From Phyllobates terribilis (lineage: Eukaryota), in NCBI RefSeq assembly GCF_046119375.1, contig NW_027362773.1, positions 160,270,001 through 160,334,000 of the forward strand: a stretch of 64,000 nucleotides of DNA, read 5' to 3'. Below are positions 6,521-53,600 of the stretch, piece after piece. A program made the position numbers and the translations under genes. Every line of letters starts with the position of its first letter. Position 1 is the stretch's first letter. The notes beneath the pieces are model-generated. The model was not told the origin of the DNA and did no database searches. It saw only the letters and a program-made list of their open reading frames with translations.

Positions 6521-8716
6521 AGCCAAGCTACAAAGACCATCAGATGTCACGGGTATCCTGGGCTACGACATAGGGAGGCTACCTGAAAGAAGAAGAGAAA
6601 GACGACGGTCATAAGAAAGCATTCACCTGCGATTTACATCTAATGATGAACGTGGTCGAGACGTAACGCAACAATGCCGGCAAAGCAAAGTTAGAATCCA
6701 GCTTCATACCAGGCAGGTACTGGCTGCGTTACACAGCTGACATCCACCTATCACTGCAGCAACAGGAGTGCCCTCCGATCACTGCGGATCAACCAATTAA
6801 ATATTAAATAACACCATTGGCACGATTATAAAGAACCGATGGGTTACCATGGCGTAGCTGCCATCTTGGTCCTCCCATGAAGTAGAGCCACAGGCTGGGC
6901 TCCATATGAGAACCGCGATTTCCCTGTATGCTGCAGTATATAGTAAAGGTTGTTAAATCGCAGGTTTCCACTAGAAGGACTAAAATAAAGTAAAAATTAA
7001 AGAAAAATGTTTTAAAAAATATAAACGGTTTTAATCATCTCTCACTTCAACAATAACGAAAGGAAAAAAAAAATCATATCTAGCATCGTCGCGTCCAAAA
7101 AAAACATCAAAATCTAAAATGATTGAAAACATAAGTTAAAAAAATTCTATTTATTCATCGCCAAACAAAATTACGATACAAATGTCCTATGTACCCCAAA
7201 ATCTGTATCAATAAACCTTACTAATCTCAGAAAATGGCGACACAATTTTCTTTTCTGAATATTTTCTCACCCCAAAAATATTTACCACCCAATGAATGTT
7301 GTAAAAATGGGAATTTCGCAATTTCATCGCACTTGGAAAGTGAATGGGGTCATATTGTGACCCGAAAGGACCCATGACAAGCAAATCGCAAACAGTTGGA
7401 ACCACTTGGATTTTTCTGACTTGCTTCTCACAGTATCTTGGGGATCACCTTGTGACCCCAATCGCTTGCACCATGCTGCCGAAAAGTTGGATAAATTTTA
7501 AGACAAAATGCACAACAATTTTTCGTCATGTGACTTGATGCCGCGTGAACAACGTCGCTGCGCCGTCCTTGTCGCACCCAGCGATTCCCCTGTGATAATG
7601 CTGCCAGCCATAGGATACGGTCAGAGACCCTTCCCTTCTGCTCTTAGTGTCCACAGACGCCTCAGACTTGATATATTAAATGTGATCGATCTTTGTGATC
7701 GTGGGTCGAATGCAGCAGACGCTTTTATGTCTTTTTTCCCTCAGCGCCTGTTATTGACATATAAATTAAGGCGAGATTTAGAGAGAGAAACATATCCGAT
7801 CACTGACAGGGGTGGAAATCCAATGACGGTCTACTATTTCCATGGCCGATATATCGCCACCATTTTGCCAGGCGAAATACCATATAATAACCACATCACA
7901 CCGGTCAGGCCCCGCGCTCTGTCCCTGGGCTGCATGTAGGAGATATTACTTCCATAACATGAAATGGAACAATAATAGCCCCTATACGCCTCCCAGGACA
8001 GGGCTACCATAAGTTCACATGGGTTAGTGGGGCTCTTTGCCACCTTTAAAGCAAGGACTGGAGCCAATTCCAAAAATGGGGCCTTGCTGAGGATAGTGGT
8101 GGTGTTTTATGCAAGATTTGTAGAGAAGATCTATAAAATGTCCAGCGCCCTTCCTCAGCTAATTTCGCAACTGCCATAAAAGTGAATGGAAAGCGATAGG
8201 TGCAGGTCCCAGGGGTGGGAGGTAAGGAATTTCATTGCCGGAGGATTGAGAGAGATGGGGGGTGCTCTACGAGAAGCTATTAGGAAATATGGGGTCCATT
8301 TACTGTCCAGTCATTTCTGGTATTTGCACCTGATGCCTTTGTATAAGTTTAAGCTGCAAGGAGAAATGCAAAAGTTCTATCCTCCCTGCAGCCGCTCGCT
8401 TCCAGTCATCGGGGCAGAGCGGTTACAGTCGCCAATCACTATACAATGTGATCTCCTCAGCACATTGACTGACAGCAACGCTCCAATATCTGGAAGTCAG
8501 TGGCTGCAGAGAGAATAAAACTTCATTTTCTCCCTGTAGCTGCTCCTCCAGTAAGGCAGGCATGATATAAATGCTATTAACCGGCAGATTATCACTATGT
8601 ATGCAGGTAAATAGTGTTTTTTGTAGGTGATAGATTCCTTTTAAATTGGAGTTGAGCAAAAAGATTTGCATTTCACTGGTCCGGTGTCCAGTGTGGTCCT
8701 CCATATGTGGCTGGAC

Positions 8717-12407: not shown

Positions 12408-14045
<1,638 letters not shown>

Positions 14046-26200: not shown

Positions 26201-28597
26201 GTCACTTGATGAGGATGGGTGTACATGTTTTCTCCTGATGCAATAGGTGTTTCCGTTCCAGGTGGTCTGTCCTGAGACGCCGGTGGAGGTTTCGCCAGAT
26301 GCCCGCAGCCTGCTGAGCTCCTGCTCCAGCAACGACGTGCCCCAGGATGATTTCGTCATGGTGGACTTTGTAAGTGGCCCTTGCCTGACAAGCAAAAGTA
26401 AACCAATGCAAGTCATCCGTGAGTCCATATTCTTTTGTGGCTTCTTGTAACCGGCTCACATCTGTTATTACCTACTTCACTACTGGTTGATCTTGGCACC
26501 ACCATTCCGTACACTGCGCGCCCGCTGCCATGTGCTGCTCCTTGTATCTACTCCCTGCCGCACAGTAAATTATAATGTCAGATGAATATTTAATATTTCT
26601 TCCCGTACTGTGATATTAGTGACTTACCCTTAGGGCGCAGTCAGACGACCGTATAGATCGGACCATAGTGCACAGACTGTCCGGCAGACATATATTTCTA
26701 TGAAGCTGTCACGCTCGGGTTCGGAGACCCGCCGGCCAATCCGTGCATTGCGGTCTGATTTATACGGTCGTCTGACTGCGCCCTGAGGATAGGTCATCAC
26801 TGCCAGATCGGTGGGGGTCCGACAACCAATATCCCCACCCTCAGCAGCCAGATGTAGACAATATACAACTCCTTATACTGTGTAGCAGCCATGACACGGT
26901 GTGAGCAGCTGTGCTGTTCTGCCTGCTAACTGTGGGGCCGCTGGGTGTCGGACGCCAACCGATCTGATGTTGATGACATCCTAAGTTCTTATCTGTCATT
27001 AGAATAGTGGATATCTTGCAAATCACTGAAGGTCCGATCCGCTGGGATCCCATTGATTACTGGCTGTGTTGATCTTTGAATAGACCAATGACACTGTGCC
27101 GTCAATCATCTCACTACAATAGTGCACTTAGCACTCCCATACCAGTGATCGTTAGGGCCCAAGATATTTGTCCTCTGTCCAGTGGATCTACTGTAAGAAA
27201 TTTCATTTATGATAATGCAAATTCTTTGTTTTTTTGCAGCGACCGGCCTTTTCTAAAGATGATCTTCCAATGGACGTGGGGACCTTCTACCGCGAGTTTC
27301 AGAACCCCCCTCAGCTGAGCAGCCTCTCTATCGACATTGCCATCCAGTCCATGGCCGAAGACTTGGTGAGAAATGGTTTTATTAAGGTTATGCATGTTAG
27401 ATAGAGGACTGTTTCCTCCTGATACTCGGCTGTCAGAGTTGTCAGGATCTAATTTCTGGGCCGGCGGGGTCGCTCCCGAGTCTGAGGGCATCTCTTGCGC
27501 CCCGCACCGCAGCATCGAGGACACCCAGCGCAGACTTACCGATCGAAGGCACATTGTGAATCGGCTTTTATTAGTGTCATCACGTATCAGATGTAACTGC
27601 TGGTACAATTTATTGAGTGGTGTTCGTCTTACACGGTCCTTATCTCCACGATGATTTAACATATGGTGTTACTTTTACTATAGGGCAGACCTCACCAGCA
27701 ACTGATCACAAGCGATGCACAAGTAAGGCCCTGTTCCTACTCACGTTTTTACCCATGTAGGACATACATTGTCCCCATGGGCTTCTCTGAGACAGACGTA
27801 TGCCAAAAAATGTAAACTTAGAAGGTTACTAAAAAAGCAGAGGTGACTCCACATATGAGGGCACTTACACCGACCTGATCCGCCAACATGTCCACTATGT
27901 ACTGGTGGCAAATAGATTTCATCCCTGGAATCACACACCATTTTTGTTGTAGTTTATGTGTTGTTGTTTTTTTTTTTGAGCCTGTAGAGGCAAAAAAAAA
28001 TAAGAAAAGGACTATTGCGTTTCCATCTTGCGGGATCCACGTGTGGCTTTGGCGTAAATAATTGCATTAAACACTGCATGTGTCAGATTGCATCACGGAC
28101 AGAGTTGCAAATAAAAGTGGCGTAAAACGGACAGAACTGGCGCAGGCTGTGAATATTTTTTCGATAATCTATGTGAGAAATCGCTCGTGCACTTTCATTC
28201 AGAGCGATCATGGACTATAAACAGACTGGAAATACATCGGTGTGAATGCTGCCGTGTGCCGCAATCAGACATTTGCGACTTGGCAACGGCGTTACATGCA
28301 GCCATTTTACAAAGGGTTAATGTGAAGTTTTATTAGGCAAAAACATGAGGGGAGCTTAGCCTCGAAGGATTAGAAAGTAATCTGGGATCCACTAGAGCCA
28401 TCGTCCTCTTGTTTGCTTTGTTTGTTTTTTTTTTACATTAAAAAGGGGCATAAAATAAAAAATTGTCTACTAATCCCTTTGCCAGTCCCCTAAATCTCCC
28501 CTCTGTCTCCTCTCCATAGGATTCTCTGCCGGAAAAGTTGGCCATGCATGAAAAAAACATGGAGGAGTTTGATGCCTTCGTTGAATCCCTGCAGTAA
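17266..28597 (+). CDS. ATG13: Autophagy-related protein 13 (HORMA domain, LIR, C-terminal ULK1-binding region), ~545 aa
   Basis: Coding exons: 17266-17334, 18350-18430, 18527-18646, 19517-19563, 20020-20160, 20578-20618, 21481-21577, 21777-21875, 22902-22992, 23990-24088 (alternative), 24701-24811, 25408-25535, 25611-25719, 26079-26156, 26247(or 26262)-26369, 27240-27365, 28520-28597. All GT-AG, phases consistent, total 1638 nt. Reads [23 protein letters not shown]...DDFVMV (LIR)...[11 protein letters not shown]. Confidence 0.97.
23289..23642. mobile_element. T2-family (Kolobok-type) MITE
   Basis: TTAA at 23285-88 and 23643-46. Ends aggagatgtcca / tggacaacccct with internal palindromic segments. 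Confidence 0.8.
26633..26783. mobile_element. 151-bp MITE with perfect 23-bp TIRs
   Basis: gggcgcagtcagacgaccgtata / tatacggtcgtctgactgcgccc. Flanks tta / tga. Confidence 0.88.
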
Positions 28598-29779: not shown

Positions 29780-30330
29780 GTTTGCAAGATATATTTCCAA
29801 GGGCCACAGACCGTTCATCAGACGACCCCCAAACTCTGCATTCAGCCACAGTACACCCTGCAGACAGTGAAGCATGGTGGTGAAGCATCATGATATGGGC
29901 ATGTTCCTCTTACTATGGTGCCGGACCTATTTACTGCATACCAGGGATCATGGACCAGTTTGCATATATTAAAATACTTGAAGAGGTCATGTTGCCTTAC
30001 GCTGAAGAGGATATGCCCTTGAAATGGGTGTTACAACAAGACAACGACCCTAAACACACCAGTAAACGAGCAAAATCTTGGTTTCAGTCCAACAAAATTA
30101 AGGTTATGGAGCGGCCATCACAATCCCCGGACCTTAATCCGATAGGACACTTGTGGGGTGACATCAAAAATGCCGTTTCTGAGGCAAAGCCAACAAATGC
30201 CCAAAAAATTGTGGGATGTAGTCAAAGCATCCTGGGCTGGAATAACAGTGATAGGTGCCAGAAGTTGGTTGACTCTATGCAACGTAGATGTGAAGCAGTT
30301 CTAAAAAACTGTGGGTAACCACTAAATACT
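29780..30330 (+). pseudogene. Tc1 transposase remnant (3' half)
   Basis: [25 protein letters not shown] and SPDLNPIGHLW (catalytic E lost), frameshifted. No intact TIR pair found. Confidence 0.85.
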
Positions 30331-32690: not shown

Positions 32691-33460
32691 TACGTCTGCA
32701 ATTGACTCCCATTGTAAAAGAAATGTAAATCTGCGCAATGTAAATCTTATGTGGCTCTTTGTGAGGAAACCTTAGTAGATTCCCCTTTTACTGTCCCAGT
32801 GGATCCCTCGTGTGCAGGGCAGTGGATGGACACTTCGGAGGTCACACATCAGGGTCGTCCCCCTATTTGTAACCCCCTGAATCGGCCTCACGTTATGCTC
32901 CGTGCTGGAGACATTTGCAATCTACGACCATAAACCAGAGGATTCGGATGTTTTCGCGTTCACGATCCCTACTCGCCATGTGACCGTAGTCGCCACCTAG
33001 CTCCCGGAACAAAGCCTTTATATTAGCGGAGGCTGGTTTTGCCTCCATGTACACGTATCAGGCTGTAGAGCTGGAGCGCCCCTGTAAAGGTCCTGTAATT
33101 TGAGGATTGTGCTCTATGTTTAGAAAGCAGCATGTGTTCCCATGTAAAAGCGGGGGAGGACTAAACCAGGCCTGGGTGTAATCCTGTGCTCTGTGTGCTG
33201 CAGGAGAGGAAGGGTTAATCTTAGCAATACGAGGTGTAGGCAGGTTCCTCTCCAGATGGTGCTCCAAGGGTTAAAGGGACAATGCCCCAGGGAGTGTCTG
33301 CGTGTTGTTTTCAGAAGCTGCAGCCAATCATAGAGCTGCCTTTTGAGGGGCTGGAATCCATATCTCCTTCCTATTGGTGGAGTCAGAAACGCCTCCGGGA
33401 GTGATGGGCGCAACTTTCGAGAAAAACAAAGAAGCAGAAACTGTTATTGGAGCAAGGACC

Positions 33461-36400
33461 ATGAGAGGTGGACGAGGCCGGGCGCACACGGACACCAGGT
33501 GAGGAGGTCACCTGCGCAGGTGTAGAGATGCCTGGACGCTGAGATCTGGGGGCTGTTTGCTTCTTCTCTCTCACATTTTGGTGGCTACAAGGACAGATAA
33601 GACTGCGCCATCCGTCGCATTATGACATCACATCTAACCATTCCCTATGGTGTCCCATTGCGACTTCCTGCAGCCCAGTCGCATTGTTTCCGTGTGTTGG
33701 ATTTTCAGTTGCTGGTGGCGAGTGGCGCGCATGTTTCCTGCCGTAGACCTCGGTGCAAGTGACTGCGACTTGTCCGAGATCCGCCATTATTTTACTATAA
33801 AATTGCAACTCTAATACTGGGGATAGCCAGAGACTTTTGCCGCTGCTACATCGTGGCGTAATGCGGGTGAATGGCGTCGCACTGCGACCGCGACAAGCAA
33901 GTGGCGAAGAGTCCGAACTAATTAGATTTTTGGTGACTTGTCGCAGTACCAAGCAGGTTGCAATGTGACGGGACTCGCCTGCATGGCACTATGTGGTAGC
34001 AGCGGCGGTGGCACAATGCGACCTGTATTGTGCCCACAGTTGCAGCCTTACATGGTCACACAACAGCAGATCGCGTGTGACAAGTCCCTGTGAAGCCCCA
34101 ACCTAAAACACCTGTGTGTATAAAGGAGACCCTATATCTCAGTGTCCGAGACCCCCTGTGACTGCGATATCAAAAAGGGAGAGGAGGGTTTAAGGGTGAT
34201 TCCAATTCTAACAATATAGGTGATGACTACTAAATCAGGGCAGGTCTGGTCAGTAAGACCCCAAATGATCACCAGGGCTGCACCCACGTATCTCCGACAG
34301 TCCGAGCTGCAGGTCACCGCAGCTTTCAAATGGGGGCACAAGTCGACCGTTCCGCCATCAGTGGGGGGCTCGGCTATCTGATAGTGATCACCTGTCCACT
34401 TATAACTCAAATGCCCCTTTATATATTTTGTTTGTGATTGTAGGGCCGGGCCGGTGATGCCCCCCATGCCATGCGGCTTTGTGAAGGAAAACTGGCTGTG
34501 GGACGCAAATGACCTGTGCCCATCAGTGAAGCTGTCACATAGTCGGAAAGAAGTGTATTTCCACACGGATCCTGTCTCGGAGAGTGGCGGTACCGCTGGA
34601 GTACGGGGGGATGCAGGTGAGAGGAAGCACCAGGATACCCGACTTCCATTGTTAATACCCCATGCATGTAGGATAGATGTCCTCTATCTTTTCCAACCTC
34701 CCCAAACACCTGAACTTTCAGCTCGGCCGAACACTCGTGTGTCCTCGGCAAGGAGAAGAGCGTACGCCCCTTACAGACTCCTCCGGCATCGGCTGGTATG
34801 ATCGCAGGGAGACGGCGGGTTGTGATGGCAGGTGGGAGCCCACTGAAGACCCCCATTATCCTCCTATGTAGCTGAGCCTGTGGTATTGCTGTGTATGAAA
34901 CAAGCAGTAAAACCATCGCAGGTTCATGTGACTAAGTGAAAAATAGTGAAAAATTTAAACAAAAAAAAAAGTTAAGCGAAAAAAAACTCCAAACTAAATA
35001 TCACTGCACAACTGTAAGCAAAAGGAGGAGGGGTGAGGGGTCTGCTGGGGACCCTTTAATATCTCTCATCCCCAGACATCGAGTGTCCGACCCTGATGAT
35101 GACCAATGACGTCAGTCAGCGGTTCTCCTCGGCAGGATCTCACTGATCCAATCAGTAAGAGGTCTCCATATTCCCTTTTGTCTTGTATCTTTTGTCTTGC
35201 TCTGTATTGTCTTTTATACCTTCTCTTTATTCCACCATTGTTGTAATTTGTAAGTTCTGTACTATTGTGTATGCCAGTAACAATAAACCAACAAAAAGGA
35301 GAACAAAATTCTGTCAAAGAAACATTGTATGTTAACCCCCAAAAAAATGATACTTATTCCTTGCTACTCTAAACGTACCCACAACCTCAAAGAGGGAAAG
35401 TTTTTAGCCGAAATGTGTTACTCTGTGATTTCTGGACGAGTATATATAATATATGATATTATATTCTAATATAAAAGTGATTCACCACTCTTTTCCCAAC
35501 TGAAAACTTAAGAACTTTAGCAAAACAATAAAAAAAAAAAATTGGGTATCGCCGCGTCTGCAACACGGTCAAAATGTAAAATTATTTAACCTTATTGGCA
35601 ACGTCATTTTTACTGCACAATGAACACAGAAAAAATGAAAGCCAAATACCAAAGGTGGAATTGTATTTTTGTTTTCACTCTCTTGTGGGTACGTTGACAG
35701 AAAAATAAAACGTTATGGTTCTTGGAAGAAGGAAAGGAAAAAAAAAAACTGTGAAAAATTAGGAATTGACAGTAGACAGCACAAGCCGCTGAGCTCACTG
35801 ATTGGCTGCAGCGCTGTTGATGTGAGGTCAGCGCTGCAGACAATAACAGACATCTGGAGCAGCGGAGGAGACTCAGCCTTGGACCCGGGAGGGTGGGTGA
35901 GGCACAGATTTTTGGGGGTTTTGAACATCAAACTGGGCCAGAGGACACGTTTTCTGAAAACAGACGTCTCCTTTCAGCGACACGTGGCCGATCGTCTGAT
36001 CAGTGGAATTGTGCAAGGTCATTTCTAGGTTTCGCTGCTTTATCGCTCCCTCATGTGTCTGAGTCTTTGATCACTGTCACCCGTTTTCTTACGCTTTTCT
36101 CTACCCCTTGTCCAGGCTTCCTACAAGGAGAACATTACTGGGAGATTGAATTCCTGGAGCCGCCGTCTGGACTTTCCGTCATGGTCGGTGTTGGCACCAG
36201 CAGAGCCGCTCTATGTGCCGGCAGCTTCCAGTATCTCAACTTACTGGGTAAGATGGGGCCCATCCTAAGTCCAGAGAGCCAACAAAACTCTCAGGACCCC
36301 CGGCCATCGGTAATAGCAGAGGGGTCCCCATGTTACAAGGTCGGGGGGCTCCTACCAGTGAGACCATTGTAAGATCTCCTCCCATTCCCACCACTAATGA

Positions 36401-37738
36401 TCCATGTGACTATTTCCAGGCCTGGATGCCGACAGCTGGGGTCTGTCCTATAAAGGCAACATCTGGCACGGGGGCAGCAGCAGGCAGTACACCGAACCCT
36501 TCTATGAGGAGGGGACGCTGATCGGCCTGCACCTGAACATGGGGGACGGGACGCTGACGTTTTACAAAGACCGGCAGAGTCTGGGGGTGGCCTTCACCGG
36601 ACTCCACAAGGTAATGTCACGGGTCACCGTATAGAGTGTAAATATATAATATACGCAGAGCATCGCAGCTGTGGTAGGAGTCAGAACATGCAGAGCCTCA
36701 CAGTTGTAATAGAAAGGGGTCAGAACATGCAGAGCATCGCAGCTTTGCTAGAAAGGAGTGAGGACACGCAGAGCATCGCAGCTATGAGATAAAGGAGTGA
36801 GGACAATCAGAGCAGTACTGCTTGATAGAAAGGTGTCAGGACACGCAGAGCATTGCAGCTGTGATAGAAAGGTGTCAGAACACGCAGAGCATCGCAGCTG
36901 TGATAGAAAAGGGTTAAGACACGCAGAGCATCACAGCTGTGATAGAAATGGGTCAGGACACGCAGAGCATCGCAGCAGTGATAGAAATGGGTCAGGAGAC
37001 TCACAGCTGTGATAAAAAGCGGTCAGGATATGCAGAGCATCACAGCTGTAATAAAGGCGTCAGGACACGCAGAGCATTGCAGCTTTGATAGAAAGGTGTC
37101 AAGATAGACAGAGCTTTGCAGCTGTAATAGAAAGGCGTCAGGACACTCAGAGCATTGCAGCTATGATAGGAAGGAGTCAGGATACGAAGAGCATCTCAGC
37201 TCTGCTAGAAAGCTGTCAGGACATGCAGAGCATCGCAGCTCTGCTAGAAAGCTGTCAGGACATGCAGAGCATCGCAGCTCTGCTAGAAAGCTGTCAGGAC
37301 ATGCAGAGCATCGCAGCTCTGCTAGAAAGCTGTCAGGACATGCAGAGCATCGCAGCTCTGCTAGAAAGCTGTCAGGACATGCAGAGCATCGCAGCTATGA
37401 TAGAAAGGAGTTAGGATACGAAGAGCATCGCAGCTATGATAGAAAGGAGTCAGGATACGAAGAGCATCGCAGCTGTGATAGATAGGAGTCCGGACATGAT
37501 TGTACTATGGTGTGTGACCATTGTCCTCACCTCTCAGGTGCAGCTGCCATTATTTCCCATGGCGTCTTCCACCAGCCCTGGCACAGAGTTGGCCCTGGGA
37601 CTTCGCTGCTGCACTTTGCCATCTCTGGAGGAGCGATGCCTCAGTACGTTGGCTCGTAACCTGACAAGGAAAGACTCCGCTGATCTGCTCCCTCTGCCGG
37701 CAGTTGTCAGGTGGAAGCTGAAGAGCTGGAAGAATTGA
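33461..37738 (+). CDS. SPRY domain + SOCS box protein (SPSB3-like paralog), 244 aa
   Basis: Exons 33461-33498 (ggaccATG, phase 2), 34444-34616, 36116-36247, 36420-36610 and 37538-37738. All GT-AG, 735 nt in frame. SPRY motifs ENWLWD, GTAGVRG, GEHYWEI, MVGVGT, SWGLSYKG, IGLHLNMGDGTLTFYK. SOCS box SLEERCLSTL (BC box) and LLPLP (cullin box). Confidence 0.92.
36660..37500. repeat. 39-bp minisatellite, ~21 copies, in the last intron of the SPSB3-like gene
   Basis: Unit caggacatgcagagcatcgcagctctgctagaaagctgt. Homogeneous block at 37201-37400 with diverged flanking copies. Confidence 0.92.
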
Positions 37739-38557
37739 GACGCTCTGAGCCATGGGCTGTAATGTACGAAGCCACGGGTAGACACTGAATACCCACGAGG
37801 CTGAGACCATCCTTGTATGACCCGTCCGGAATCACCGGCTTGAAGACCCCAGGAGGAGCCGTCGGGTAGAAGGGTAAAGCGTATGGACAGTGAAGTCCAC
37901 CCAACGTCTCAGAAGAGTCCAACCTGGCAGCGATGGACACCACGGTACATATTGCAAAATGCCAGGATGGGGGGTAAAGGGTGTAGACCCCCAGCAGGGC
38001 ACAGAGACAATGTGGAAAGGGAACAGACAGGAAGGTATCATGGCCGCCCACAGTCGGGGAGCAGTGCCTCTAGGGGCGTGCAATTTGGGATTTGCTCTGA
38101 ACACCGTCCTCCACTATTTTGCTTCCAGACTTTTGAGTTTTGAACCAAGAGACTGAATTGAGGTGTTGCCCATCGCAACCAACTAGATTGTGTATTAATT
38201 GTACAACCAATCTCGGCAGATTCCCGGGGATTGGTCCTGTGTTAGAGATGAGACTGTGACCTTCTTATCCTCAAACACTTCTGTATTACATGGGAGTCTT
38301 CTTATAGGTTCTTGTTCAGTACTTTTGGTCTCAGTAATTCCAGACCACATACCCTGCAGGGGTTAATACAGTCTGGTATGACTGCAGGGCATTGGTCCTA
38401 ACCTTCCAGTGTCAGGGCATGATGGGAGTTGTAGTTTTGCTTCATCTAGAGAGCTACAAGCCGGGACCACTGTAATACAACCTGTGTCTTTCCAACTACC
38501 ACTCCCATCATGCCCTGAAAGTCCTAGACGATCCTTACTGCGAACAACCCTGAGTTA

Positions 38558-39259
38558 GGCTATGTGCCCACGTTGCGGACCTGAAGCATATTTTTTACGC
38601 TTCTCCCTGGCGGGAAAATCGCATGCGGATATTACATGCGGTTTTCCCGCCAGGTAGAAGCGTTTGTGAGGCGTCTTTGCATGCATTTCCGCATGCGGGT
38701 TATCAAGCACTTCTCCAAGCATCACTTGGAAAAGTGCTTGACAACTTGTTCAGAATGGTAAAAAATAAAAAAATAAACTTTATACTCACCTTCTGATGCA
38801 TTCTCTGCCCCGTCCGGAGGCTTGAGCGGCTCACGCTGTTGTGTGCAGGACCTGCGGTGACGTCATTGAGTCATGTGGTGGGTCACATGACTCAATGACG
38901 TGGCAGGCCCTTCAGACAACAGCGCGACGGAGGGAAAACATCAGAAGATAAGTATAAACTTTATTTTTTTCTTTTTTTTACAGGTTCTTTGGTACCCAGG
39001 TCTGGAGGAGAGTCTCCTGTCCTCCACACCCGGGTACCATCCGCACATTGATTCCGCTGCGCTTCCGCAAAATTAATGAACATGCTGCGGATTTTTGACC
39101 GCAGCATATACGCTGCGGAAAAATCCGCAGCATGGGCATTGACATTGCGGAATGCCATTGGGGACCATGGGGTGCGGATATACATGCGTTTTTCAAGCGT
39201 TTACGCTGCGGAAATTCCGCAGCATATACGCTTGAAAAACGCTACGTGGGCACACAGCC
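38558..39259. mobile_element. ~700-bp composite MITE with central perfect hairpin
   Basis: TIRs ggctatgtgcccacgt / acgtgggcacacagcc, flanks tta / taa. Internal perfect 18-bp-arm palindrome acgtcattgagtcatgtg-N6-cacatgactcaatgacgt (~38860-38902). Confidence 0.75.
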
Positions 39260-39641
39260 TAAAGGGGTCTCAACAGCCTCCAGAAGGCGCAGCGGAAGTG
39301 ACCCTGAAAGAGTTAACTCTTATCTATGCCCGTCATCTGCCATCTTTATTTTCATCCTGTTGCATCATTCTTTGCACAAGTCCTCCCTCCTTCCTGGGAT
39401 CCGTTCCCATATTTCTCTGTAGCCGCCTTAAGAGCGAAGTCGCAGGAAAACTTATGGCATTAGATGCGAGTGAAGAGAAGAAAACGGCCCAAATAATGCT
39501 GCGCCCCCAGCGTCCGGGGGTCATGGGACTAAAGGCCGAGTTCCCATAGGACCTTTCGGTTGTGGAAATCGACCAGATTTGCAACAGGTGCAACTGGCGG
39601 TAATATCCGCAGCGCCGACGTAAAGCGCGGGCGGGGGCTTC

Positions 39642-40420
39642 GCTAGTGTTATGGTCGGGGGCGTCTCTAGCGTTATGGGCGGGGGCGTCGCTAGCGTTAT
39701 GGGCGGGGGCGTCGCTAGCGTTATGGGCGGGGGCGTCGCTAGCGTTATGGGCGGGGGCGTCGCTAGCGTTATGGGCGGGGGCGTCGCTAGCGTTATGGGC
39801 GGGGGCGTCGCTAGCGTTATGGGCGGGAGAGTTGCTACCGTTATGGGCGGGGGCGTCGCTAGCGCTATGGGCGGGGGCGTCGCTAGCGGTATGGGCGGGG
39901 GCGTCGCTAGCGGTATGGGCGGGGGCGTCGCTAGCGTTATGGGCGGGGGCGTCGCTAGCGTTATGGGCGGGAGAGTTGCTACCGTTATGGGCGGGGGCGT
40001 CGCTAGCGCTATGGGCGGGGGCGTCGCTAGCGTTATGGGCGGGGGCGTCGCTAGCGTTATGGGCGGGGGCGTCGCTAGCGTTATGGGCGGGAGAGTTGCT
40101 ACCGTTATGGGCGGGGGCGTCGCTAGCGCTATGGGCGGGGGCGTCGCTAGCGGTATGGGCGGGGGCGTCGCTAGCGTTATGGGCGGGGGCGTCGCTAGCG
40201 TTATGGGCGGGGGCGTCGCTAGCGTTATGGGCGGGAGAGTCGCTAGCGTTATGGGCGGGGGCGTCGCTAGCGTTATGGGCGGGAGAGTTGCTAGCGTTAT
40301 GGGCGGGGGCGTCGCTAGCGTTATGGGCGGGGGCGTCGCTAGCGTTATGGGCGGGGGCGTCGCTAGCGTTATGGGCGGGAGAGTCGCTAGCGTTATGGGC
40401 GGGGGCGTCGCTAGTGTTAT
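39642..40420. repeat. 24-bp GC/CpG-rich minisatellite, ~32 copies
   Basis: Unit gcgggggcgtcgctagcgttatgg, with variant units (gggagagttgctaccg) recurring at 120-144-bp intervals. Confidence 0.95.
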
Positions 40421-40655
40421 GACCTGTCTATAATGGTGGCATGTTGCCAGAGATGCGGCGTCATTATATATGGCGGCGTCAGCAATAGTCGGTCGAATTT
40501 CGAGTTCATGAACATTATCGTTTCCACGATTAAACCTCATTGCAATTGCTTGATATATATCTCTAGTATTTTGTATGAATCACTCAAAACTATCACAGAC
40601 AAAAAAATTTACAAAAATTTGTTGTACAATGTTACCTGAACTGATCCCATTAATA

Positions 40656-43600
40656 CAGGGATGTCAAACGCAAATACAGAGAGGACCTCAGAATAAAAAG
40701 ATTGGACGAAGTCGCCGGCAAACTTGATATTTATTAAAACAATGTCTACAAATGAAGTTTTTTCCTCATCGAATATAATGATTAAACTTTTCATATGGAA
40801 ACAAACTTAAAGGAGTTGTGCCACAAAGTACATTTTAATTAATAGATCTTAGAATAAAGTCCTCCATACAGAATAATGGGCCCACATAGTCCTCCATACA
40901 GAATAATGGGCCCACATAGTCCTCCATACAGAATAATGGGCCCCACATAGTCCTCCATACAGTATAATGGGCTCCACATAGTCCTCCATACAGTATAATG
41001 GCCCCACATAGTCCTCCATACAGTATAATGGGCCCCACATAGTCCTCCATACAGTATAATAGGCCCCACATAGCCCTCCATACAGTATAATGGCCCCACA
41101 TAGTCCTCCATACAGTATAATGGGCCCCACATAGTCCTCCATACAGTATAATGGGCCCCACATAGTCCTCCATACAGTATAATGCCCCCACATGGTCTTC
41201 CATACAGAATAATGATCCCCACATAGTCCTCCATACAGTATAATGGCCCCACATAGTCCTCCATACAGTATAATGGGCCCCACATAGTCCTCCATACAGT
41301 ATAATAGGCCCCACATAGTCCTCCATACAGAATAATGGGCCCCACATAGTCCTCCATACAGTATAATGGGCTCCACATAGTCCTCCATACAGTATAATGG
41401 CCCCACATAGTCCTCCATACAGTATAATGGGCCCCACATAGTCCTCCATACAGTATAATAGGCCCCACATAGCCCTCCATACAGTATAATGGCCTCACAT
41501 AGCCCTCCATACAGAATAATGGGCTCCACATAGTCCTCCATACAGTATAATGGCCCCACATAGTCCTCCATACAGTATAATGGGCCCCACATAGTCCTCC
41601 ATACAGTATAATAGGCCCCACATAGCCCTCCATACAGTATAATGGCCCCACATAGTCCTCCATACAGTATAATGGGCCCCACATAGTCCTCCATACAGTA
41701 TAATGGGCCCCACATAGTCCTCCATACAGTATAATGCCCCCACATGGTCTTCCATACAGAATAATGATCCCCACATAGTCCTCCATACAGTATAATGACC
41801 CCACATAGTCCTCCATACAGTATAATGACCCCACATAGTCCTCCATACAGTATAATGGCCCCACATAGTCCTCCATACAGTATAATGGGCCGCACATAGT
41901 CCTCCATACAGTATAATGGCCCCACATAGTCCTCCATACAGCATAATGGGCCCCACATAGTCCTCCATACAGCATAATGGGCCCCACATAGTCCTCCATA
42001 CAGTATAATGGGCCCCACATAGTCCTCCATACAGTATAATGGGCCCCACATAGTCCTCCATACAGTATAATGGGCCCCACATAGTCCTCCATACAGTATA
42101 ATGGGCCCCACATAGTCCTCCATACAGTATAATGGGCCCCACATAGTCCTCCATACAGTATAATGGGCCCCACATAGTCCTCCATACAGTATAATGGGCC
42201 CCACATAGTCCTCCATACAGAATAATGGGCACCACATAGTCCCCCATACAGTATAAAGGCCCTACATAGTCCTCCATACAGTATAATGGGCCCCACATAG
42301 TCTTCCATACAGTATAATGGGCCCCACACAGTCCTCCATACAGTATAATGGGCCCCACACAGTCCTCCATACAGTATAATGGGCCCCACACAGTCCTCCA
42401 TACAGTATAATGGGCCCCACATAGTCCTCCATACAGTATAATGGGCCCCACATAGTCCTCCATACAGTATAATGGGCCCCACATAGTCCTCCATACAGTA
42501 TAATGGGCCCCACATAGTCCTCAATACAGAATAATGGGCACCACATAGTCCCCCATACAGTATAATGGCCTCACATAGTCCTCCATACAGAATAATGGGC
42601 TCCACATAGTCCTCCATACAGTATAATGGCCCCACATAGTCCTCCATACAGTATAATGGCCTCACATAGTCCTCCATACAGAATAATGGGCTCCACATAG
42701 TCCTCCATACAGTATAATGGCCCCACATAGTCCTCCATACAGTATAATGGGCCCCACATAGTCCTCCATACAGTATAATAGGCCCCACATAGCCCTCCAT
42801 ACAGTATAATGGCCCCACATAGTCCTCCATACAGTATAATGGGCCCCACATAGTCCTCCATACAGTATAATGGGCCCCACATAGTCCTCCATACAGTATA
42901 ATGCCCCCACATAGTCCTCCATACAGAATAATGATCCCCACATAGTCCTCCATACAGTATAATGGCCCCACATAGTCCTCCATACAGTATAATGACCCCA
43001 CATAGTCCTCCATACAGTATAATGACCCCACATAGTCCTCCATACAGTATAATGGGCCCCACATAGTCCTCCATACAGTATAATGGCCCCACATAGTCCT
43101 CCATACAGCATAATGGGCCCCACATAGTCCTCCATACAGCATAATGGGCCCCACATAGTCCTCCATACAGTATAATGGGCCCCACATAGTCCTCCATACA
43201 GTATAATGGGCCCCACATAGTCCTCCATACAGTATAATGGGCCCCACATAGTCCTCCATACAGTATAATGGGCCCCACATAGTCCTCCATACAGTATAAT
43301 GGGCCCCACATAGTCCTCCATACAGTATAATGGGCCCCACATAGTCCTCCATACAGTATAATGGGCCCCACATAGTCCTCCATACAGAATAATGGGCACC
43401 ACATAGTCCCCCATACAGTATAAAGGCCCTACACAGTCCTCCATACAGTATAATGGGCCCCACACAGTCTTCCATACAGTATAATGGGCCCCACACAGTC
43501 CTCCATACAGTATAATGGGCCCCACATAGTCCTCCATACAGTATAATGGGCCCCACATAGTCCTCCATACAGTATAATGGGCCCCACATAGTCCTCAATA

Positions 43601-43966
43601 CAGAATAATGGGCACCACATAGTCCCCCATACAGTATAAAGGCCCTACATAGTCCTCCATACAGTATAATGGGCCCCACATAGCCCTCCATACAATATAA
43701 TGGCCCCACATAGTCCTCCATACAGTATAATGGCCCCACATAGTCCTCCATACAGTATAATTGGCCCCACATAGTCCTCCATACAGTATAATTGGCCCCA
43801 CATAGTCCTCCATACAGTATAATTGGCCCCACATAGTCCTCCATACAGTATAATTGGCCCCACATAGTCCTCCATACAGTATAATTGGCCGGGCCCACAT
43901 AGTCCCTGGCATTGCGGGCCAAATATAATCACCCTGAGGCCCATGACCATGAGTTTGACATGTATG
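40656..43966. mobile_element. Non-autonomous hAT element inflated by an internal satellite
   Basis: Left TIR cagggatgtcaaac at 40656; right TIR gtttgacatgtatg ending at 43966. 8-bp flanks cattaata / cattaaaa (7/8 match). Subterminal gcgggcc motifs. Confidence 0.75.
40858..43900. repeat. 30/31-bp minisatellite, ~100 copies, ~3 kb
   Basis: Unit cc(c)cacatagtcctccatacagtataatgg(g). Source of the 1027-aa, 462-aa and 329-aa artefact ORFs. Confidence 0.97.
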
Positions 43967-44320
43967 CATTAAAAGGACTGTTGATCTTGTAAGGGCGAGT
44001 TCAGTACCGTGGTCGTGGTTCGGACCGTCCGCGAGACTCCTGACCCAAACTCTGCAGCCTCATCTATGCCCCCACGTTGTGTCAGGAGACTCCCGGCGGG
44101 TTTGTGCTCAGCGTTTCACAGACGTACGAGTTGGACCAATTTAGCAGCAGTGTCAGTAAGGCTCAGTTCCCACAGTGAGTATGTTCTGATTTTTTTACCT
44201 GCAGGTTTTCTGCTTAGTCCGCATCATAATACGCAATATTCTTCTTCTCTGATTATTGCATTTTGATGAATTACTTTGGCTGTGGTTTCCTTTTATACAA
44301 TGTGTTTTTGGTGCTGATTT

Positions 44321-44650
44321 GAAGCAGCATTGTTTATTGCCTTTTATGAAGCAGCATTGTTTATTGCATTTTATGAAGCAGCATTCATTGTTTATTGCAT
44401 TTTATGAAGCAGCATTGTTTATTGCATTTTATGAAGCAGCATTGTTTGTTGCCTTTTATGAAGCAGCATTGTTTATTGCCTTTTATCAAGCAGCATTGTT
44501 TGTTGCCTTTTATGAAGCAGCATTCATTGTTTGTTGCCTTTTATGAAGCAGCATTGTTTGTTGCCTTTTATGAAGCAGCATTGTTTATTGCCTTTTATGA
44601 AGCAGCATTGTTTATTGCCTTTTATGAAGCAGCATTGTTTATTGCATTTT
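44321..44650. repeat. 27-bp minisatellite, ~12 copies
   Basis: Unit gaagcagcattgtttattgccttttat. Confidence 0.92.
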
Positions 44651-45979
44651 ATTATTAAGATTTTATGATGCACTTAGGTTTTTTTTAAGTGCATTTTTTC
44701 AGGCTTATTATTGAAGCCAATGGAGTCCAGGAGTGCAAATAAAACATTAGGAAAACGTCCTCTTATTGATGGTCGTGTGTTGGTTACATGCATCTCCACG
44801 CAATAAAAAGCCACATGCACTTTTTTTTATCTGCGAATCTTCCGCGTCCCATTGAAGACTATGAGCAAAATTAGCAAAAAAAAATGCGTATTAACTGCCA
44901 AAAAAAATTGACATGCTGCAGATTTCCAAATTACACGGCGGGTCAGCGTCAGCAGCGTTAAAAGACAAAAGTGGGCAAAATCTAGAAATCTCCACTTTGC
45001 TTGACTGCTCATATATACCTATGAGGCGGCTGAGTTGTGTGCAGACTTGTGGTTGGTCTGTGATAAACATGTGTGAATGCGGCCTAAGTGCGTATTCACA
45101 CGTAGCCGCTGTGGTTTGGGTACAAATCCCCTAGATATGTATTATGGTGTCACGAAAGCCTCTCAAAACCTGCTTTATAGGCCGTTTTAGCAGCACCCAG
45201 GGGATTTGCCAACTCGGCTCGCGGTGAAAGTCCTCTGCAAGAGTTGGTAAGTAAGTACACCCTTAGGAAATATTCATAGGTGGCAGACGTGCAGAAATAC
45301 ATGTGCTTGTCTCTAAAACAACCCATCAGAGGTCTGGCACTAATCTCCAGCTGCATGTGAACATATCCCAAGCGGAGAAAATCAGCGGCTGCTCCTCTTC
45401 TCCATAGAATAAAATGGGAAAGAAAAATTGTAAATTTAGCGCAATTTTTTTCATTGTCACGGTCACCACGGGGCAAAATTTCTGAAAATTCTATCCTGAA
45501 GCGCGACATGAACATGTTGTTGGCAGCAGCGATTGTCCGGGGTGTGAACACTCAGCAACCTCCCGGCACTGAACGTTCTGTTTAGCTTCTTGTGAACTTT
45601 GCCCCGTGGCCTCCTGCCGAACCTATCAGGTGTGACCGCACCCGGACACGAGAGGTACGGGGAGAGGCTGCAGGTGACACATTCACACCTGAGGGGGGCG
45701 CCGCAGTGATACCTGGAGCTGGGAAAGCTGACAACAAATACGGCCGCACGGAATGGGATATATTTACAGGAGGTGCAAGTAAATAGCCAGAAAAAGCTGA
45801 ATTCTAAACGGCTGCAAAACGCTTATTATACAGGTAATGCAAATATGTGTAAAAAACTGCAAATCACAATGAAATAAAATGTATTTGTTTTCCAATCGCA
45901 GTTTTACCGCACCCTAAGGCCCATTTCAGACGTCTGCTTTTCACGTACATGTTCTAGTCGTGGTTTTCATGGATAGTAT

Positions 45980-50642: not shown

Positions 50643-53600
50643 TTAGTGAATGTCCCCGAACAGCTCCTTCTGGCGGTCGAGCAGGAACTTGGTGAAGGTG
50701 TTGATGGGATTTATGGCTTTCAGGGTCATTGCCACGTCCTTTGCCCAGAGGAGGTTGGGGCCGAACACCACGGCCAGGTTGGCATTTGTCATCTTATTCT
50801 GGTCGCTCCGGGCGGATACCTGAAGAAGAGTCAGAGACCATCGGTGAGGAAGAGAATAGACTATTGCACCCGGCACATTGCTGAGGAGCCGCCATCTTAC
50901 CTCAACTAGAAAAGCGAGGAGGAAGCGCAGAACTTCATAATTCTCTTCAGGCAAAGTCTTCAGAGTCTCTCGAGTGGATTCCACCCGCGTCTCCGGCTCT
51001 AAATCTGCAAGAGATCCGTATGGGAAGAATGAAAGCCGGACTGCAGAACGGACGGTCGACTGGAGAAATCACCAAAGATGATGCTGGTGTGGCCATTAGA
51101 GACCCTCCACTCAGACTCAGGGGGGCCACCCTCTCCGCCGGTCTATGGCTGCCGCCCGATAGGCGATCACCAGCCTTAGTGGTGATGCTGAGGGTCGGAG
51201 CGTCGCACCTTCTGTATAACAGTTTAATAAAATCATTGCGGCTGATTGCTGGGAATATCCATCCGCAGCAGCCAACGCATCGCAGTGATCTCCCCGGCAT
51301 GGCAGCAGGGAGCGGGGCGGCGGCCGGGAAACGAGGCGGCGGCCGGGAAACGAGGCGGCCAGATTCTTATCTCTTTACTACATGGCCTTGAAAATGAAGG
51401 TCACAGATATATGATGGGATTTATCTGCCGGTTGTTTTGGATCATCTTTAATCAGAGGGCAAGAGTGACTTGTATAAAAGTGATGGCATGCTGCTTCACG
51501 ACTGGCAGAGATCGGATCCCCATATTCCTAAAGCAATGAATGTACCTGCTGAGCAGCGCTCCTACTCACTGAGCCATGCAGGGAACAGCAGCCGATGCAT
51601 GTGAATAGCGAGCAACAGAGACAACTCTGTGCAGAGATAAAAGGCCGCAGTGCTCGTCCATCTATGATCAGAGGGGTCTGACCTTTGGGACCCTGGTCTA
51701 GATTCTGGGCTACATCTTCATGTTTTTCCCTACACAGTGGTCTTTAGCCGCCCGTCTGTGCAGGGGGAAACCTCGGTGCAGCCCCTAAGTGTGCGGTGCA
51801 TGTTTTCTGCACAGTCGCTGTACAGGAAAATACTCAAATGAAAGCAGCGCCTTCACTTTTTCGCCCCTGCACAGCAGCACTCTGAAACGCGTTTTGCAGC
51901 ACAGCCTCATTCAAGTGCATGTGTTCGGCTATAGACCCCTGTGAACCGAGGAGGCCGGGAAAGCTCAGCAGTAAGTGATACCGGCCCGATCTACTTTATG
52001 AGATGGGATGACAAGAGTCACAGGACACCAGGAATAAAGGAAATCAACATGAAAGATTCGGGTGCAGCAACCAATCAGGTCTCGGCTTCTCTCCTCCATC
52101 TTTTCGCCATCGTCGGCTGTGATCTGATTGGTTGCGCCACAATCTTCACTTACTGGAGAATCCGACCACGTAGTTGTACAAGTTGAAGGTCAGCAGCGGG
52201 TCGGGGAGCTCCCGGAGGAAGGTCTTCAGGATGACCGCGGTCAGGTGGACGTCGTCGTACTGCTGGAAGTCCACGGGCGATCCTGGACAGAGAACGGACG
52301 CCATCATTAGTGCAGACCACGGTGCAATCTGTCACTTATCAGTGATTTATGACCAGAGGCTGTGAGACTACTACTCTCAGCATCCCATGACAGCGTCCGG
52401 CCTTCCTATTTCACACTGCATAAGATTTCACGCAGTTTTTTTGGGTGAAAGGACACAAAAAAAAGGTGGAACAATGAAGAAATGATTTGTGAGGGCGACA
52501 TTGACAGATTTACACCATCCACGAATAATCAGTGAATATGGGGGTGGGGGTTGTTAGGGCCTTATCTGCGAGCTGGAGGACCCAATGTCCGTATAGATAA
52601 TGGTGTAATACCTCATTTCCCCTGCGGTGGCGCTGCACAGACACTGAACACCCACGACCAGGTTCCTCAGTGGATCACAGCTGATCGCTCCGATCTCTTT
52701 AGAGCAGCTTCAATACTCACCAACATTATACTTCTGCTGAACTTCTCGCACCACCTGAGTGCTGGCCGACCTCCGGAATATGCCCTCCGTGCTCAACGCT
52801 GCAAGATCAAAGAGGTCACAGGTCAAGATCCTGCACAAGTCAGCGCGACCATACATGCTGCAGAGGCGCCATACTGCATGTGTGTGTACACAGGCCAAGA
52901 AGTCGTTACTGATGAGGAAGACGAGGTCCGAGCTGTCGGCACTGGACGGACAGTAACAGATTGTTTAGGGTATATAGGCGGTCATCGTTCTCGGCAGCGC
53001 AAGTCCTGTTTACACCAGACAATGTGCTGCTGAGAACCATGATCTTTTGTGAAGCACAGTTCACTGAAGAACAAACGTTTTCCTCATTCACTATAATCTT
53101 GTAGTCTCCCCCGACTGCCGCAGACCCTGTGAAACGGCCGCACATAGGAATGATCCTGGTAATCATGGAGTGTAAATGGACCTTAATAGAACTCGGCTAA
53201 ACTGCTGCGACATCGCCGTGCGCATCATCCCCGCACTGCGACGTCGCCGTGCGCATCATCCCCGCACTGCGACGTCGCCGTGCGCATCATCCCCGCACTG
53301 CGACGTCGCCGTGCGCATCATCCCCGCACTGCGACGTCGCCGTGCGCATCATCCCCGCACTGCGACGTCGCCGTGCGCATCATCCCCGCACTGCGACGTC
53401 GCCGTGTGCATTATCCCATTATGTTATTGCTTGTCAGTATGAGGACATCATGCGATATTCCCGACACTAACCGTTCATCCTCAGATAGGCCACGGTCTCT
53501 TGCACGACTTGGGGAATCTTCCGGTCGCTGTCGGAGCGTTTGTCTTTGAGTCTGCAGATAACACAAAGCGATTGTTTCGTTGCTTCTAAGAGGAAAAGCA

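What the first reader, a model, noticed from the sequence alone, without database searches (positions are those of the whole stretch)
33461..37738. Intact SPRY-SOCS box gene (SPSB3-like) inserted in the ATG13-ARHGAP1 interval
Seen: five GT-AG exons splice into a stop-free 244-aa protein: MRGGRGRAHTDTRAGPVMPPMPCGFVKENWLWD...GEHYWEIEF...SWGLSYKG...PSLEERCLSTL...LLPLPAVVRWKLKSWKN. The ORF track shows it only as disconnected fragments. Known: SPSB proteins are Elongin B/C-Cullin5 E3 substrate adaptors, and SPSB3 targets include SNAIL and nuclear cGAS. As I recall, human ATG13 and ARHGAP1 are adjacent with no such gene, and the canonical SPSB3 lies elsewhere and has longer N- and C-terminal extensions. 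Inference: this is a fifth SPSB-type paralog, lost in mammals or gained in this lineage. Its divergent SPRY loops imply an unknown substrate. It sits next to an autophagy initiator gene.
Basis: partly seen in the sequence, partly recalled or inferred. Interest (0 to 1): 0.72.

Follow-up and report, generated by a model that had tools for sequence, protein, structure and literature searches.

The report
Ancient SPSB3-like ubiquitin-ligase adaptor gene
This is a real, spliced and expressed frog gene for a small SPRY-SOCS-box protein, a sister lineage of SPSB3 that has sat between ATG13 and ARHGAP1 since early bony vertebrates and is missing in amniotes; RefSeq already annotates it, but no one has studied its function.

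Summary
Five GT-AG exons (33461-33498, 34444-34616, 36116-36247, 36420-36610, 37538-37738) join in frame to 244 codons. Transcript contigs from four runs in three studies use exactly these junctions.

All exon peptides occur without a change in RefSeq XP_073514973.1, "SPSB3-like", Phyllobates terribilis, 263 aa. That model starts at an upstream in-frame ATG at 33404.

The gene is not the SPSB3 orthologue:
- It is 32% identical to a dendrobatid canonical SPSB3.
- Frogs, axolotl, coelacanth, chimaera and eel carry both genes.
- Trees separate the two clades at 100/99 support, and amphioxus and mollusc proteins fall on the short-form side.

The gene was not inserted. ATG13(+) - this gene(+) - ARHGAP1(-) is also the order in Xenopus tropicalis, spotted gar and milkfish. 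No amniote or euteleost protein of this clade was found, which points to loss.

dN/dS against Rhinoderma is 0.09. The BC box and the LPLP Cul5 box are invariant in 52 relatives. The fold model gives a SPRY sandwich plus three helices, closest to SPSB3-ELOBC.

It most likely works as a CRL5 substrate receptor with an unknown substrate. Only 3 of the 7 cGAS-contact residues of SPSB3 are kept.

Interest is moderate. The gene model is annotated, but the lineage is uncharacterised.

The parts
33320..33403 (+). Putative core promoter, with a CCAAT box at 33324-33328 and an inverted CCAAT (ATTGG) at 33373-33377
   Evidence: Read directly from the sequence. The longest transcript contig starts at 33404. 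That this stretch acts as a promoter is inference only.
33404..33498 (+). Exon 1. The exon ends in phase 2, before donor GT 33499-33500.
   Evidence: The X5 contig covers 33404-33496/8 and is joined to exon 2. P0394 residues 1-31 equal the translation of 33404-33496.
34444..34616 (+). Exon 2. It encodes the N-terminal part of the B30.2/SPRY domain, including the WxW motif and the S-x-GTAGVRG loop.
   Evidence: It is an exact match to P0394 residues 33-89. It aligns ungapped to the Rhinoderma exon.
36116..36247 (+). Exon 3, the SPRY core (GEHYWEIEF ... GVGT)
   Evidence: with junctions seen in all 4 runs. It matches P0394 residues 91-133. The exon limits are the same in Rhinoderma, Xenopus tropicalis and gar.
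36420..36610 (+). Exon 4, the SPRY core (SWGLSYKG and the YTEPFY loop)
   Evidence: Pfam SPRY scores E=1.1e-11 on this exon alone. The best PDB hit is SPSB3 chain 8okx_B at 1.4e-12. It matches P0394 residues 135-197.
37538..37738 (+). Exon 5 coding part. It holds the last SPRY strands and the SOCS box: a BC box of the S-L-x-x-x-C-x-x-x-L type, the LPLP Cul5 box, and the TGA stop at 37736-37738.
   Evidence: It matches P0394 residues 198-263. The motif columns are invariant in relatives. Three helices are predicted here in the proxy model.
37739..38582 (+). 3' UTR, with an approximate end
   Evidence: Contigs run without mismatch to 37900, the end of the stretch that was laid. They hold 512-684 further bases beyond it.
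36653..37496 (.). 39-bp tandem repeat of 22 copies filling intron 4
   Evidence: Tandem Repeats Finder. It is spliced out in all four runs.
28526..28597 (+). End of the last coding exon of ATG13, the upstream neighbour (stop at 28595-28597)
50643..50984 (-). Last coding exon of ARHGAP1, the downstream and convergent neighbour
   Evidence: Pfam RhoGAP. PDB ARHGAP1 hit at 3e-33.

Best explanation
The locus is a functional protein-coding gene. It is the golden-poison-frog copy of an old SPSB3-related lineage that RefSeq labels 'SPSB3-like'. The product is 244 or 263 aa long: a B30.2/SPRY domain followed directly by a SOCS box. It most likely acts as a substrate receptor of a Cullin5-RING ligase. 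In that model the SOCS box (BC box plus LPLP Cul5 box) docks on Elongin B/C-Cul5-Rbx2. The loop face of the SPRY domain binds a short motif in a still unknown substrate, which is then ubiquitylated.

Shown here:
- gene structure, splicing and expression;
- purifying selection;
- paralogy to canonical SPSB3;
- conserved position between ATG13 and ARHGAP1 in frogs, gar and milkfish;
- conservation of the SOCS-box motifs and of a clade-specific loop surface.

Inferred:
- Elongin B/C-Cul5 binding and E3 activity;
- a substrate different from that of SPSB3;
- loss in amniotes and euteleosts.
For: Gene model and transcripts. Exact splice junctions are seen in 4 runs from 3 studies, with exon depth about 80-200 against about 0-5 in most intron sequence. 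All exon peptides are identical to P0394, which is XP_073514973.1.

Selection and structure of the gene. Summed over per-exon counts, dN/dS is 0.09 against Rhinoderma (dS 0.70) and 0.14 against Xenopus tropicalis. Intron positions and phases are kept.

Domains. Pfam SPRY scores 1.7e-17 on P0394. The family profile aligns to SPSB3 chain 8okx_B over profile positions 18-230 of 234, through the SOCS box, at E=1.4e-59. The AlphaFold model of the 94%-identical proxy P0188 has pLDDT 84 and shows a beta sandwich plus 3 C-terminal helices. Its best Foldseek match is SPSB3-ELOBC, followed by SPSB1/2/4 and GUSTAVUS-EloBC. The BC-box L and C and the Cul5-box L-P-L-P are invariant or nearly so in 52 clade members and 20 canonical SPSB3.

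Paralogy. P0394 is 32% identical to Ranitomeya imitator SPSB3. Both genes occur in Xenopus tropicalis, Xenopus laevis, Discoglossus, axolotl, coelacanth, Callorhinchus, Anguilla and Xyrauchen. The canonical clade has 100/99 support. The short clade plus amphioxus and molluscs has 100/99 support.

Synteny. The same gene order is seen.
Against: - Pfam's SOCS_box model does not hit the frog protein, even at E<=10. It hits only 25 of 50 relatives. Exon 5 alone finds nothing in the PDB.
- No biochemical data exist for any member of this clade.
- The runs are coded and labelled only 'RNA?'. That they are RNA is deduced from the intron-less contigs.
- The fold model is of a 94%-identical proxy, not of the window's own product.
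- The trees are unrooted, because no SPSB1/2/4 outgroup could be fetched.
- Absence in amniotes and euteleosts rests on protein databases, not on genome searches.
Confidence: 0.8

Rival explanations
1. It is simply the frog orthologue of SPSB3, moved to another place and shortened.
For: Exon 4 is closest to SPSB3 among solved structures. RefSeq names several clade members plain 'SPSB3'.
Against: Frogs, including a dendrobatid, carry a separate canonical SPSB3 of 350-390 aa. Identity between the two is only 32%. The two clades are separated with 100/99 support. In Xenopus tropicalis the two genes lie on different chromosome-size records of 154.0 and 91.2 Mb.
Confidence: 0.02
2. It is a recent, lineage-specific insertion or gain between ATG13 and ARHGAP1.
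For: From memory, human ATG13 and ARHGAP1 are neighbours with no gene of this kind between them. This was not tested here.
Against: The same order and orientation are found in Xenopus tropicalis, spotted gar and milkfish. The gene has four introns at conserved positions, so it is not a retrocopy. The clade reaches sharks, amphioxus and molluscs.
Confidence: 0.02
3. The short clade and canonical SPSB3 are vertebrate whole-genome-duplication twins. Canonical SPSB3 would be the fast-changing copy, and its place outside the amphioxus/mollusc group would be a long-branch artefact.
For: The stem of the canonical clade is long (0.8-1.6 changes per column). The only clearly invertebrate sequence on the canonical side (Fopius) has a very long branch. 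P0015 and P0038 are of unknown origin. The trees are unrooted.
Against: The AU test rejects a tree that holds all vertebrate sequences together. It gives p=8e-6 without the two unknowns and p=0.015 with them. Amphioxus and molluscs join the short clade with 100/99 support.
Confidence: 0.2
4. The SOCS box has decayed in frogs. The protein would then act as a SPRY-only binder or decoy, without ligase recruitment.
For: The Pfam SOCS_box model gives no hit on the frog protein at E<=10. Exon 5 has no PDB hit of its own.
Against: The BC-box [ST]-L-x-x-x-C-x-x-x-[LIV] and LPLP are intact and invariant in 18 frog sequences. Exon 5 has dN/dS 0.06. Three helices are predicted. The profile aligns through the SOCS box of SPSB3 as seen bound to ELOBC.
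Confidence: 0.08
5. It is a transcribed pseudogene or a mere read-through product of ATG13.
For: It lies on the same strand as ATG13, 4.8 kb downstream of its stop codon.
Against: The frame is open and dN/dS is 0.09. The transcript contig starts at 33404, and CCAAT boxes lie just upstream. Independent gene models exist in dozens of species.
Confidence: 0.01

Closest known systems
SPSB3 (canonical; CRL5 receptor for nuclear cGAS, PMC10972748; PDB 8okx/8ol1)
   Same: Same architecture of a SPRY domain plus SOCS box. It is the closest solved structure by sequence (E=1.4e-59 for the family profile) and by fold. The BC box and LPLP are shared. The equivalents of Ser132, Tyr197 and Thr259 are kept.
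   Different: Identity is only 32-37%, and it forms a separate clade. It lacks the ~100-residue N-terminal extension and the Ser-rich, basic C-terminal tail. Arg213 is Pro in every clade member. Arg/Lys262 is Gly in amphibians and Glu in fishes. Tyr160 is Ser and Thr162 is Leu in frogs. The quadruple SPSB3 mutant Y160/T162/T259/R262 loses cGAS binding (PMC10972748), so cGAS recognition in the same way is unlikely. It also sits at a different genomic place.
SPSB1, SPSB2, SPSB4 and Drosophila GUSTAVUS
   Same: Same domain order and fold (Foldseek E about 1e-15, rmsd 2.1-2.6 A over about 190 columns). They are CRL5 receptors that read Asn-rich short motifs.
   Different: They are much more distant in sequence (profile E about 1e-21 to 1e-26, covering the SPRY part only). 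Their loop residues are different.
RefSeq 'SPSB3-like'/'SPSB3' models of the short clade (for example XP_073514973.1 Phyllobates terribilis, XP_002934145.1 Xenopus tropicalis, the axolotl, gar and amphioxus models)
   Same: The window's exon peptides are identical to XP_073514973.1. Length class (220-265 aa), intron positions and, in bony vertebrates, neighbours are the same.
   Different: There is no difference in kind. These are automatic annotations without functional study, and the name hides the fact that they are not SPSB3 orthologues.

Membership tests
SPSB family (SPRY domain + SOCS box proteins) | B30.2/SPRY domain | tested here: met
   Pfam PF00622 scores 1.1e-11 on exon 4 alone and 1.7e-17 on P0394. 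A beta sandwich is predicted at pLDDT above 90 over most of the domain in the proxy model, and it matches SPSB structures.
SPSB family (SPRY domain + SOCS box proteins) | C-terminal SOCS box with a BC box ([STP]-L-x-x-x-C-x-x-x-[LIV]) and a Cul5 box (LPxP) | tested here: met
   Both motifs can be read in exon 5. They are invariant in 18 frog and 34 other clade sequences. The family profile aligns through the SOCS box of SPSB3 chain 8okx_B, and three C-terminal helices are predicted. Caveat: Pfam PF07525 does not hit this protein even at E<=10, and it hits 25 of 50 relatives.
SPSB family (SPRY domain + SOCS box proteins) | Physical binding to Elongin B/C and Cullin 5, and E3 activity | not testable with these tools
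   This needs co-purification and ubiquitylation assays.
Canonical SPSB3 orthologue group | Groups with SPSB3 of other vertebrates in a tree | tested here: not met
   It falls in the other clade, and both clades have 100/99 support. Canonical SPSB3 is present separately in frogs.
Canonical SPSB3 orthologue group | Long N-terminal extension and Ser-rich, basic C-terminal tail | tested here: not met
   Alignment A1. The product ends 11 residues after the LPLP motif, and it has at most about 45 residues before the domain.
Canonical SPSB3 orthologue group | The seven cGAS-contact residues (Ser132, Tyr160, Thr162, Tyr197, Arg213, Thr259, Arg262; PMC10972748) | tested here: not met
   Three of the seven are kept in the frog protein (Ser, Tyr197, Thr259). 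The others are Ser, Leu, Pro and Gly.
Short 'SPSB3-like' clade (anamniote vertebrates, amphioxus, molluscs) | Sequence membership and clade-specific motifs (for example the YTEPFY loop and Pro at the Arg213 position) | tested here: met
   It is identical to XP_073514973.1 and lies inside the frog part of the clade. Y157, P160, F161 and Y162 are at least 90% conserved in alignment A2.
Short 'SPSB3-like' clade (anamniote vertebrates, amphioxus, molluscs) | Position between ATG13 and ARHGAP1, on the same strand as ATG13 (bony vertebrates) | tested here: met
   Window. Xenopus tropicalis, gar and milkfish. The order is not seen within 10 kb in Callorhinchus or amphioxus.

The most novel reading that the evidence does not exclude
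This is a fifth, pre-vertebrate SPSB lineage, sister to SPSB3 and closer to the invertebrate form. It has kept its own conserved substrate-binding surface from molluscs to frogs, so its substrate would be different and ancient. It has stayed next to ATG13 for over 400 million years, and it was lost independently in amniotes and euteleosts. Anamniotes would then have a CRL5 receptor, and a degradation target, for which mammals have no counterpart.
Probability: 0.55. Interest if true: 0.5.

Novelty: new member of a known kind. Interest (0 to 1): 0.35.

Why it matters
The literature treats the SPSB family as four members (for example PMC11383947). Work on SPSB3 and cGAS assumes one SPSB3 per vertebrate (PMC10972748). 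Here, frogs, salamanders, lungfish, coelacanth, cartilaginous fishes and many ray-finned fishes carry a second, well-conserved and expressed SPSB3-related gene. Databases label it 'SPSB3' in some species and 'SPSB3-like' in others. This has three consequences:
- Orthology tables and knock-down or knock-out designs in Xenopus and zebrafish-type fishes can hit the wrong gene.
- An uncharacterised CRL5 receptor with an unknown, probably ancient substrate is available for study in standard models.
- Its loss in amniotes is a clean case for asking what replaced it.

It is not a new kind of system, and the gene model itself is already in RefSeq.

Tried and rejected
Weak or empty searches:
- Pfam on exons 2, 3 and 5 alone gave nothing useful. 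The two weak hits on exon 5 (Imm31, TEP1_N, E=0.12) are noise.
- Exon 5 alone against the PDB gave no hit.
- The search of earlier findings by place and by words returned nothing.
- Paper searches for spsb3b, spsb3a, spsb3l and SPSB5, and for SPSB family papers, found no study of this lineage. Whether zebrafish 'spsb3b' is this clade was not settled.

Loci that could not be fetched or did not help:
- The gar isoform P0162 is not on record. P0180 was used instead.
- The Danio aesculapii locus was withheld.
- Within 10 kb, Callorhinchus has an SLC26-like neighbour and amphioxus has PICK1-like and GDPD neighbours. So the ATG13 linkage cannot be pushed beyond bony vertebrates with these data.

Limits of the analysis:
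- No SPSB1/2/4 sequence could be fetched as an outgroup, so the trees are unrooted.
- No canonical poly(A) signal was seen near the inferred 3' end.
- An N-myristoylation reading of the upstream start (M-G-A-T-F-E) was considered and dropped, because residue 6 does not fit.
- One human protein (P0326) appeared in a hit list and was not used in any alignment, tree or search.
Full report
**1. The observation**

- Each intron begins with GT and ends with AG.
- I translated each exon by reference in its own phase. This gives 12, 57, 43, 63 and 66 residues, plus three split codons (R, G, G) and a TGA. The total is 244 codons.
- All searches used exon references or database proteins.

**2. Transcripts**

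The look-up of sequencing runs found nine runs from three studies that hold parts of the stretch. I laid four of them.
- Each has one contig of 1355-1610 bases that lies on exons 2, 3, 4 and 5 with no mismatch.
- Each contig skips exactly the three predicted introns (GT..AG).
- The X5 contig also starts at 33404 and joins exon 1 to exon 2.
- Exon depth is about 80-200. Unique intron sequence is at about 0-5.
- The runs are labelled only 'RNA?', but intron-less contigs at this depth are transcripts.
- The contigs hold 512-684 more bases beyond 37900. The 3' UTR therefore probably ends near 38.58 kb, which is an inference.

**3. Identity of the product**

- Exon 4 alone reaches Pfam SPRY at 1.1e-11.
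- Among solved structures exon 4 is closest to SPSB3 (8okx_B, 1.4e-12). SPSB1 and SPSB4 are far behind, at about 1e-3.
- A search of 1.8 billion representatives with exon 4 led to a 241-aa axolotl protein, P0002.
- Searching with P0002 revealed a family of 220-265-aa proteins named 'SPSB3' or 'SPSB3-like'. It occurs in salamanders, many frogs, coelacanth, lungfish, sharks and a chimaera, gar, bowfin, sturgeon, bichir, eels and otocephalan teleosts. It also occurs in amphioxus (58% identical), molluscs and a sea urchin.
- Amniote proteins appear only at E about 1e-41 and about 42% identity. They are the 330-420-aa canonical SPSB3.
- The 90% cluster of the best frog hit contains XP_073514973.1 of Phyllobates terribilis (P0394, 263 aa). 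Every exon peptide of the window occurs in it exactly and in order: residues 1-31, 33-89, 91-133, 135-197 and 198-263.
- So the window is from that species or a near-identical one, and the gene model is already in RefSeq.
- RefSeq starts at the in-frame ATG at 33404. Which start is used remains open, because the longest contig begins exactly at 33404.

**4. Not the SPSB3 orthologue**

- A search with a canonical SPSB3 found 350-390-aa SPSB3 in Xenopus tropicalis, Xenopus laevis, Discoglossus, Ascaphus, Pelobates, Pyxicephalus, Aquarana, Gastrophryne and the dendrobatid Ranitomeya imitator. It also found it in axolotl, a caecilian, coelacanth and Callorhinchus.
- Many species therefore carry both genes.
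- P0394 is 32% identical to the Ranitomeya imitator SPSB3.
- Two maximum-likelihood trees give a canonical clade at 100/99. They also give a clade of the short vertebrate proteins plus amphioxus and molluscs at 100/99.
- A group of arthropod and sea-urchin proteins joins the short side.
- Forcing all vertebrate sequences into one clade is rejected. The AU test gives p=8e-6, or p=0.015 if two sequences of unknown origin are allowed in.
- The split is therefore probably older than vertebrates. The trees are unrooted and long branches are involved, so a 2R origin is not fully excluded.

**5. Not inserted**

In the window the order is:
- HARBI1-like (-);
- ATG13 (+, stop at 28595-28597);
- this gene (+, 33.4-38.6 kb);
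- about 5 kb of tandem repeats;
- ARHGAP1 (-, from 50643).

- The order ATG13(+) - gene(+) - ARHGAP1(-) is the same in Xenopus tropicalis, spotted gar and milkfish.
- It was not seen within 10 kb in Callorhinchus or amphioxus.
- Exon limits and intron phases are the same in Rhinoderma, Xenopus tropicalis and gar.
- The arrangement thus goes back at least to the common ancestor of bony vertebrates. The empty interval in mammals (from memory, not tested) is a loss.
- No amniote, euteleost or caecilian protein of the short clade appeared. This is database evidence only.

**6. Selection**

I summed per-exon Nei-Gojobori counts without joining sequences.
- Against Rhinoderma darwinii, dN/dS is 0.093 (dS 0.70).
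- Against Xenopus tropicalis, dN/dS is 0.14, with dS saturated.
- The N-terminal exon 2 is the least constrained (0.22). Exons 3-5 are at 0.03-0.08.

**7. Mechanism**

SOCS box:
- The family profile aligns to SPSB3 chain 8okx_B over nearly its whole length, through the SOCS box that binds Elongin B/C in that structure (E=1.4e-59).
- The BC-box Leu and Cys and the Cul5-box LPLP are invariant or nearly so in 52 short-clade sequences and 20 canonical ones.
- Pfam's SOCS_box model misses the frog protein and hits 25 of 50 relatives. The amphioxus orthologue passes the curated cut-off.

Fold:
- An AlphaFold model of the 94%-identical proxy P0188 has pLDDT 84. It shows a SPRY sandwich followed by three helices.
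- Foldseek ranks SPSB3-ELOBC first, then SPSB1/2/4 and GUSTAVUS.

Substrate face. The numbering is fixed by the construct 83-326 and the contacts listed in PMC10972748:
- Ser132, Tyr197 and Thr259 are kept.
- Arg213 is Pro in all 52 members.
- Arg/Lys262 is Gly in amphibians and Glu in fishes.
- Tyr160 and Thr162 are kept in most fishes but are Ser and Leu in frogs.
- The clade has its own strongly conserved loop residues, for example the YTEPFY loop.

I conclude that it is most likely a CRL5 substrate receptor with a substrate of its own. cGAS recognition in the SPSB3 manner is unlikely. That step is inference.

**8. Verdict**

It is partly wrong: the gene was not inserted or gained, and it is not unannotated. 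No paper on this lineage was found. It is an uncharacterised member of a well-known family, and interest is moderate.

Noticed in passing
window 36653-37496 (intron 4): A 39-bp tandem repeat of 22 copies fills most of intron 4. Its k-mers reach very high depth in the transcript contigs of some runs (up to about 8900 in X1 at 37304-37457). The unit must therefore also be part of abundant transcripts or repeats elsewhere in the genome.
   Followed up: partly
window 35764-35917 (intron 2): A short element with a 16-nt inverted repeat (35801-35816 / 35829-35844). It shows high contig depth (120-430) and 'opposite strands' joints in several runs. It looks like a dispersed, transcribed repeat such as a MITE.
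   Followed up: partly
window 39629-44652: Three large tandem arrays lie between this gene and ARHGAP1: a 24-bp unit x33 (39629-40421), a 31-bp unit x99 (40858-43890) and a 27-bp unit x12 (44320-44652). They create long spurious ORFs of up to 1027 aa on the minus strand.
   Followed up: no
window 12777-13826 (+): An uninterrupted 349-aa Tc1/mariner-type transposase ORF lies between HARBI1 and ATG13. It carries HTH_SB, HTH_Tnp_Tc3_2 and DDE_3 domains and is possibly a young or active copy. Broken relatives lie at 4326-5255 and 29890-30318.
   Followed up: partly
window 2364-6550 (-): A HARBI1-like gene in two coding blocks (DDE_Tnp_4 halves at 5774-6547 and 2367-2750) lies head-to-head with ATG13. 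From memory, this is the same arrangement as in mammals.
   Followed up: partly
window 37736-37738 versus L007 11481-11483: The dendrobatid stop codon TGA corresponds to TGG (Trp) in Rhinoderma, whose product runs on for 8 more residues. Eleutherodactylus and Engystomops also have the longer tail. The dendrobatid proteins are therefore truncated by one base change just after the SOCS box.
   Followed up: partly
database naming: RefSeq calls both paralogues 'SPRY domain-containing SOCS box protein 3' in Xenopus laevis, Xenopus tropicalis, Callorhinchus and Latimeria. In other species it calls the short one '-like'. Orthology by name is unreliable for this gene pair.
   Followed up: yes
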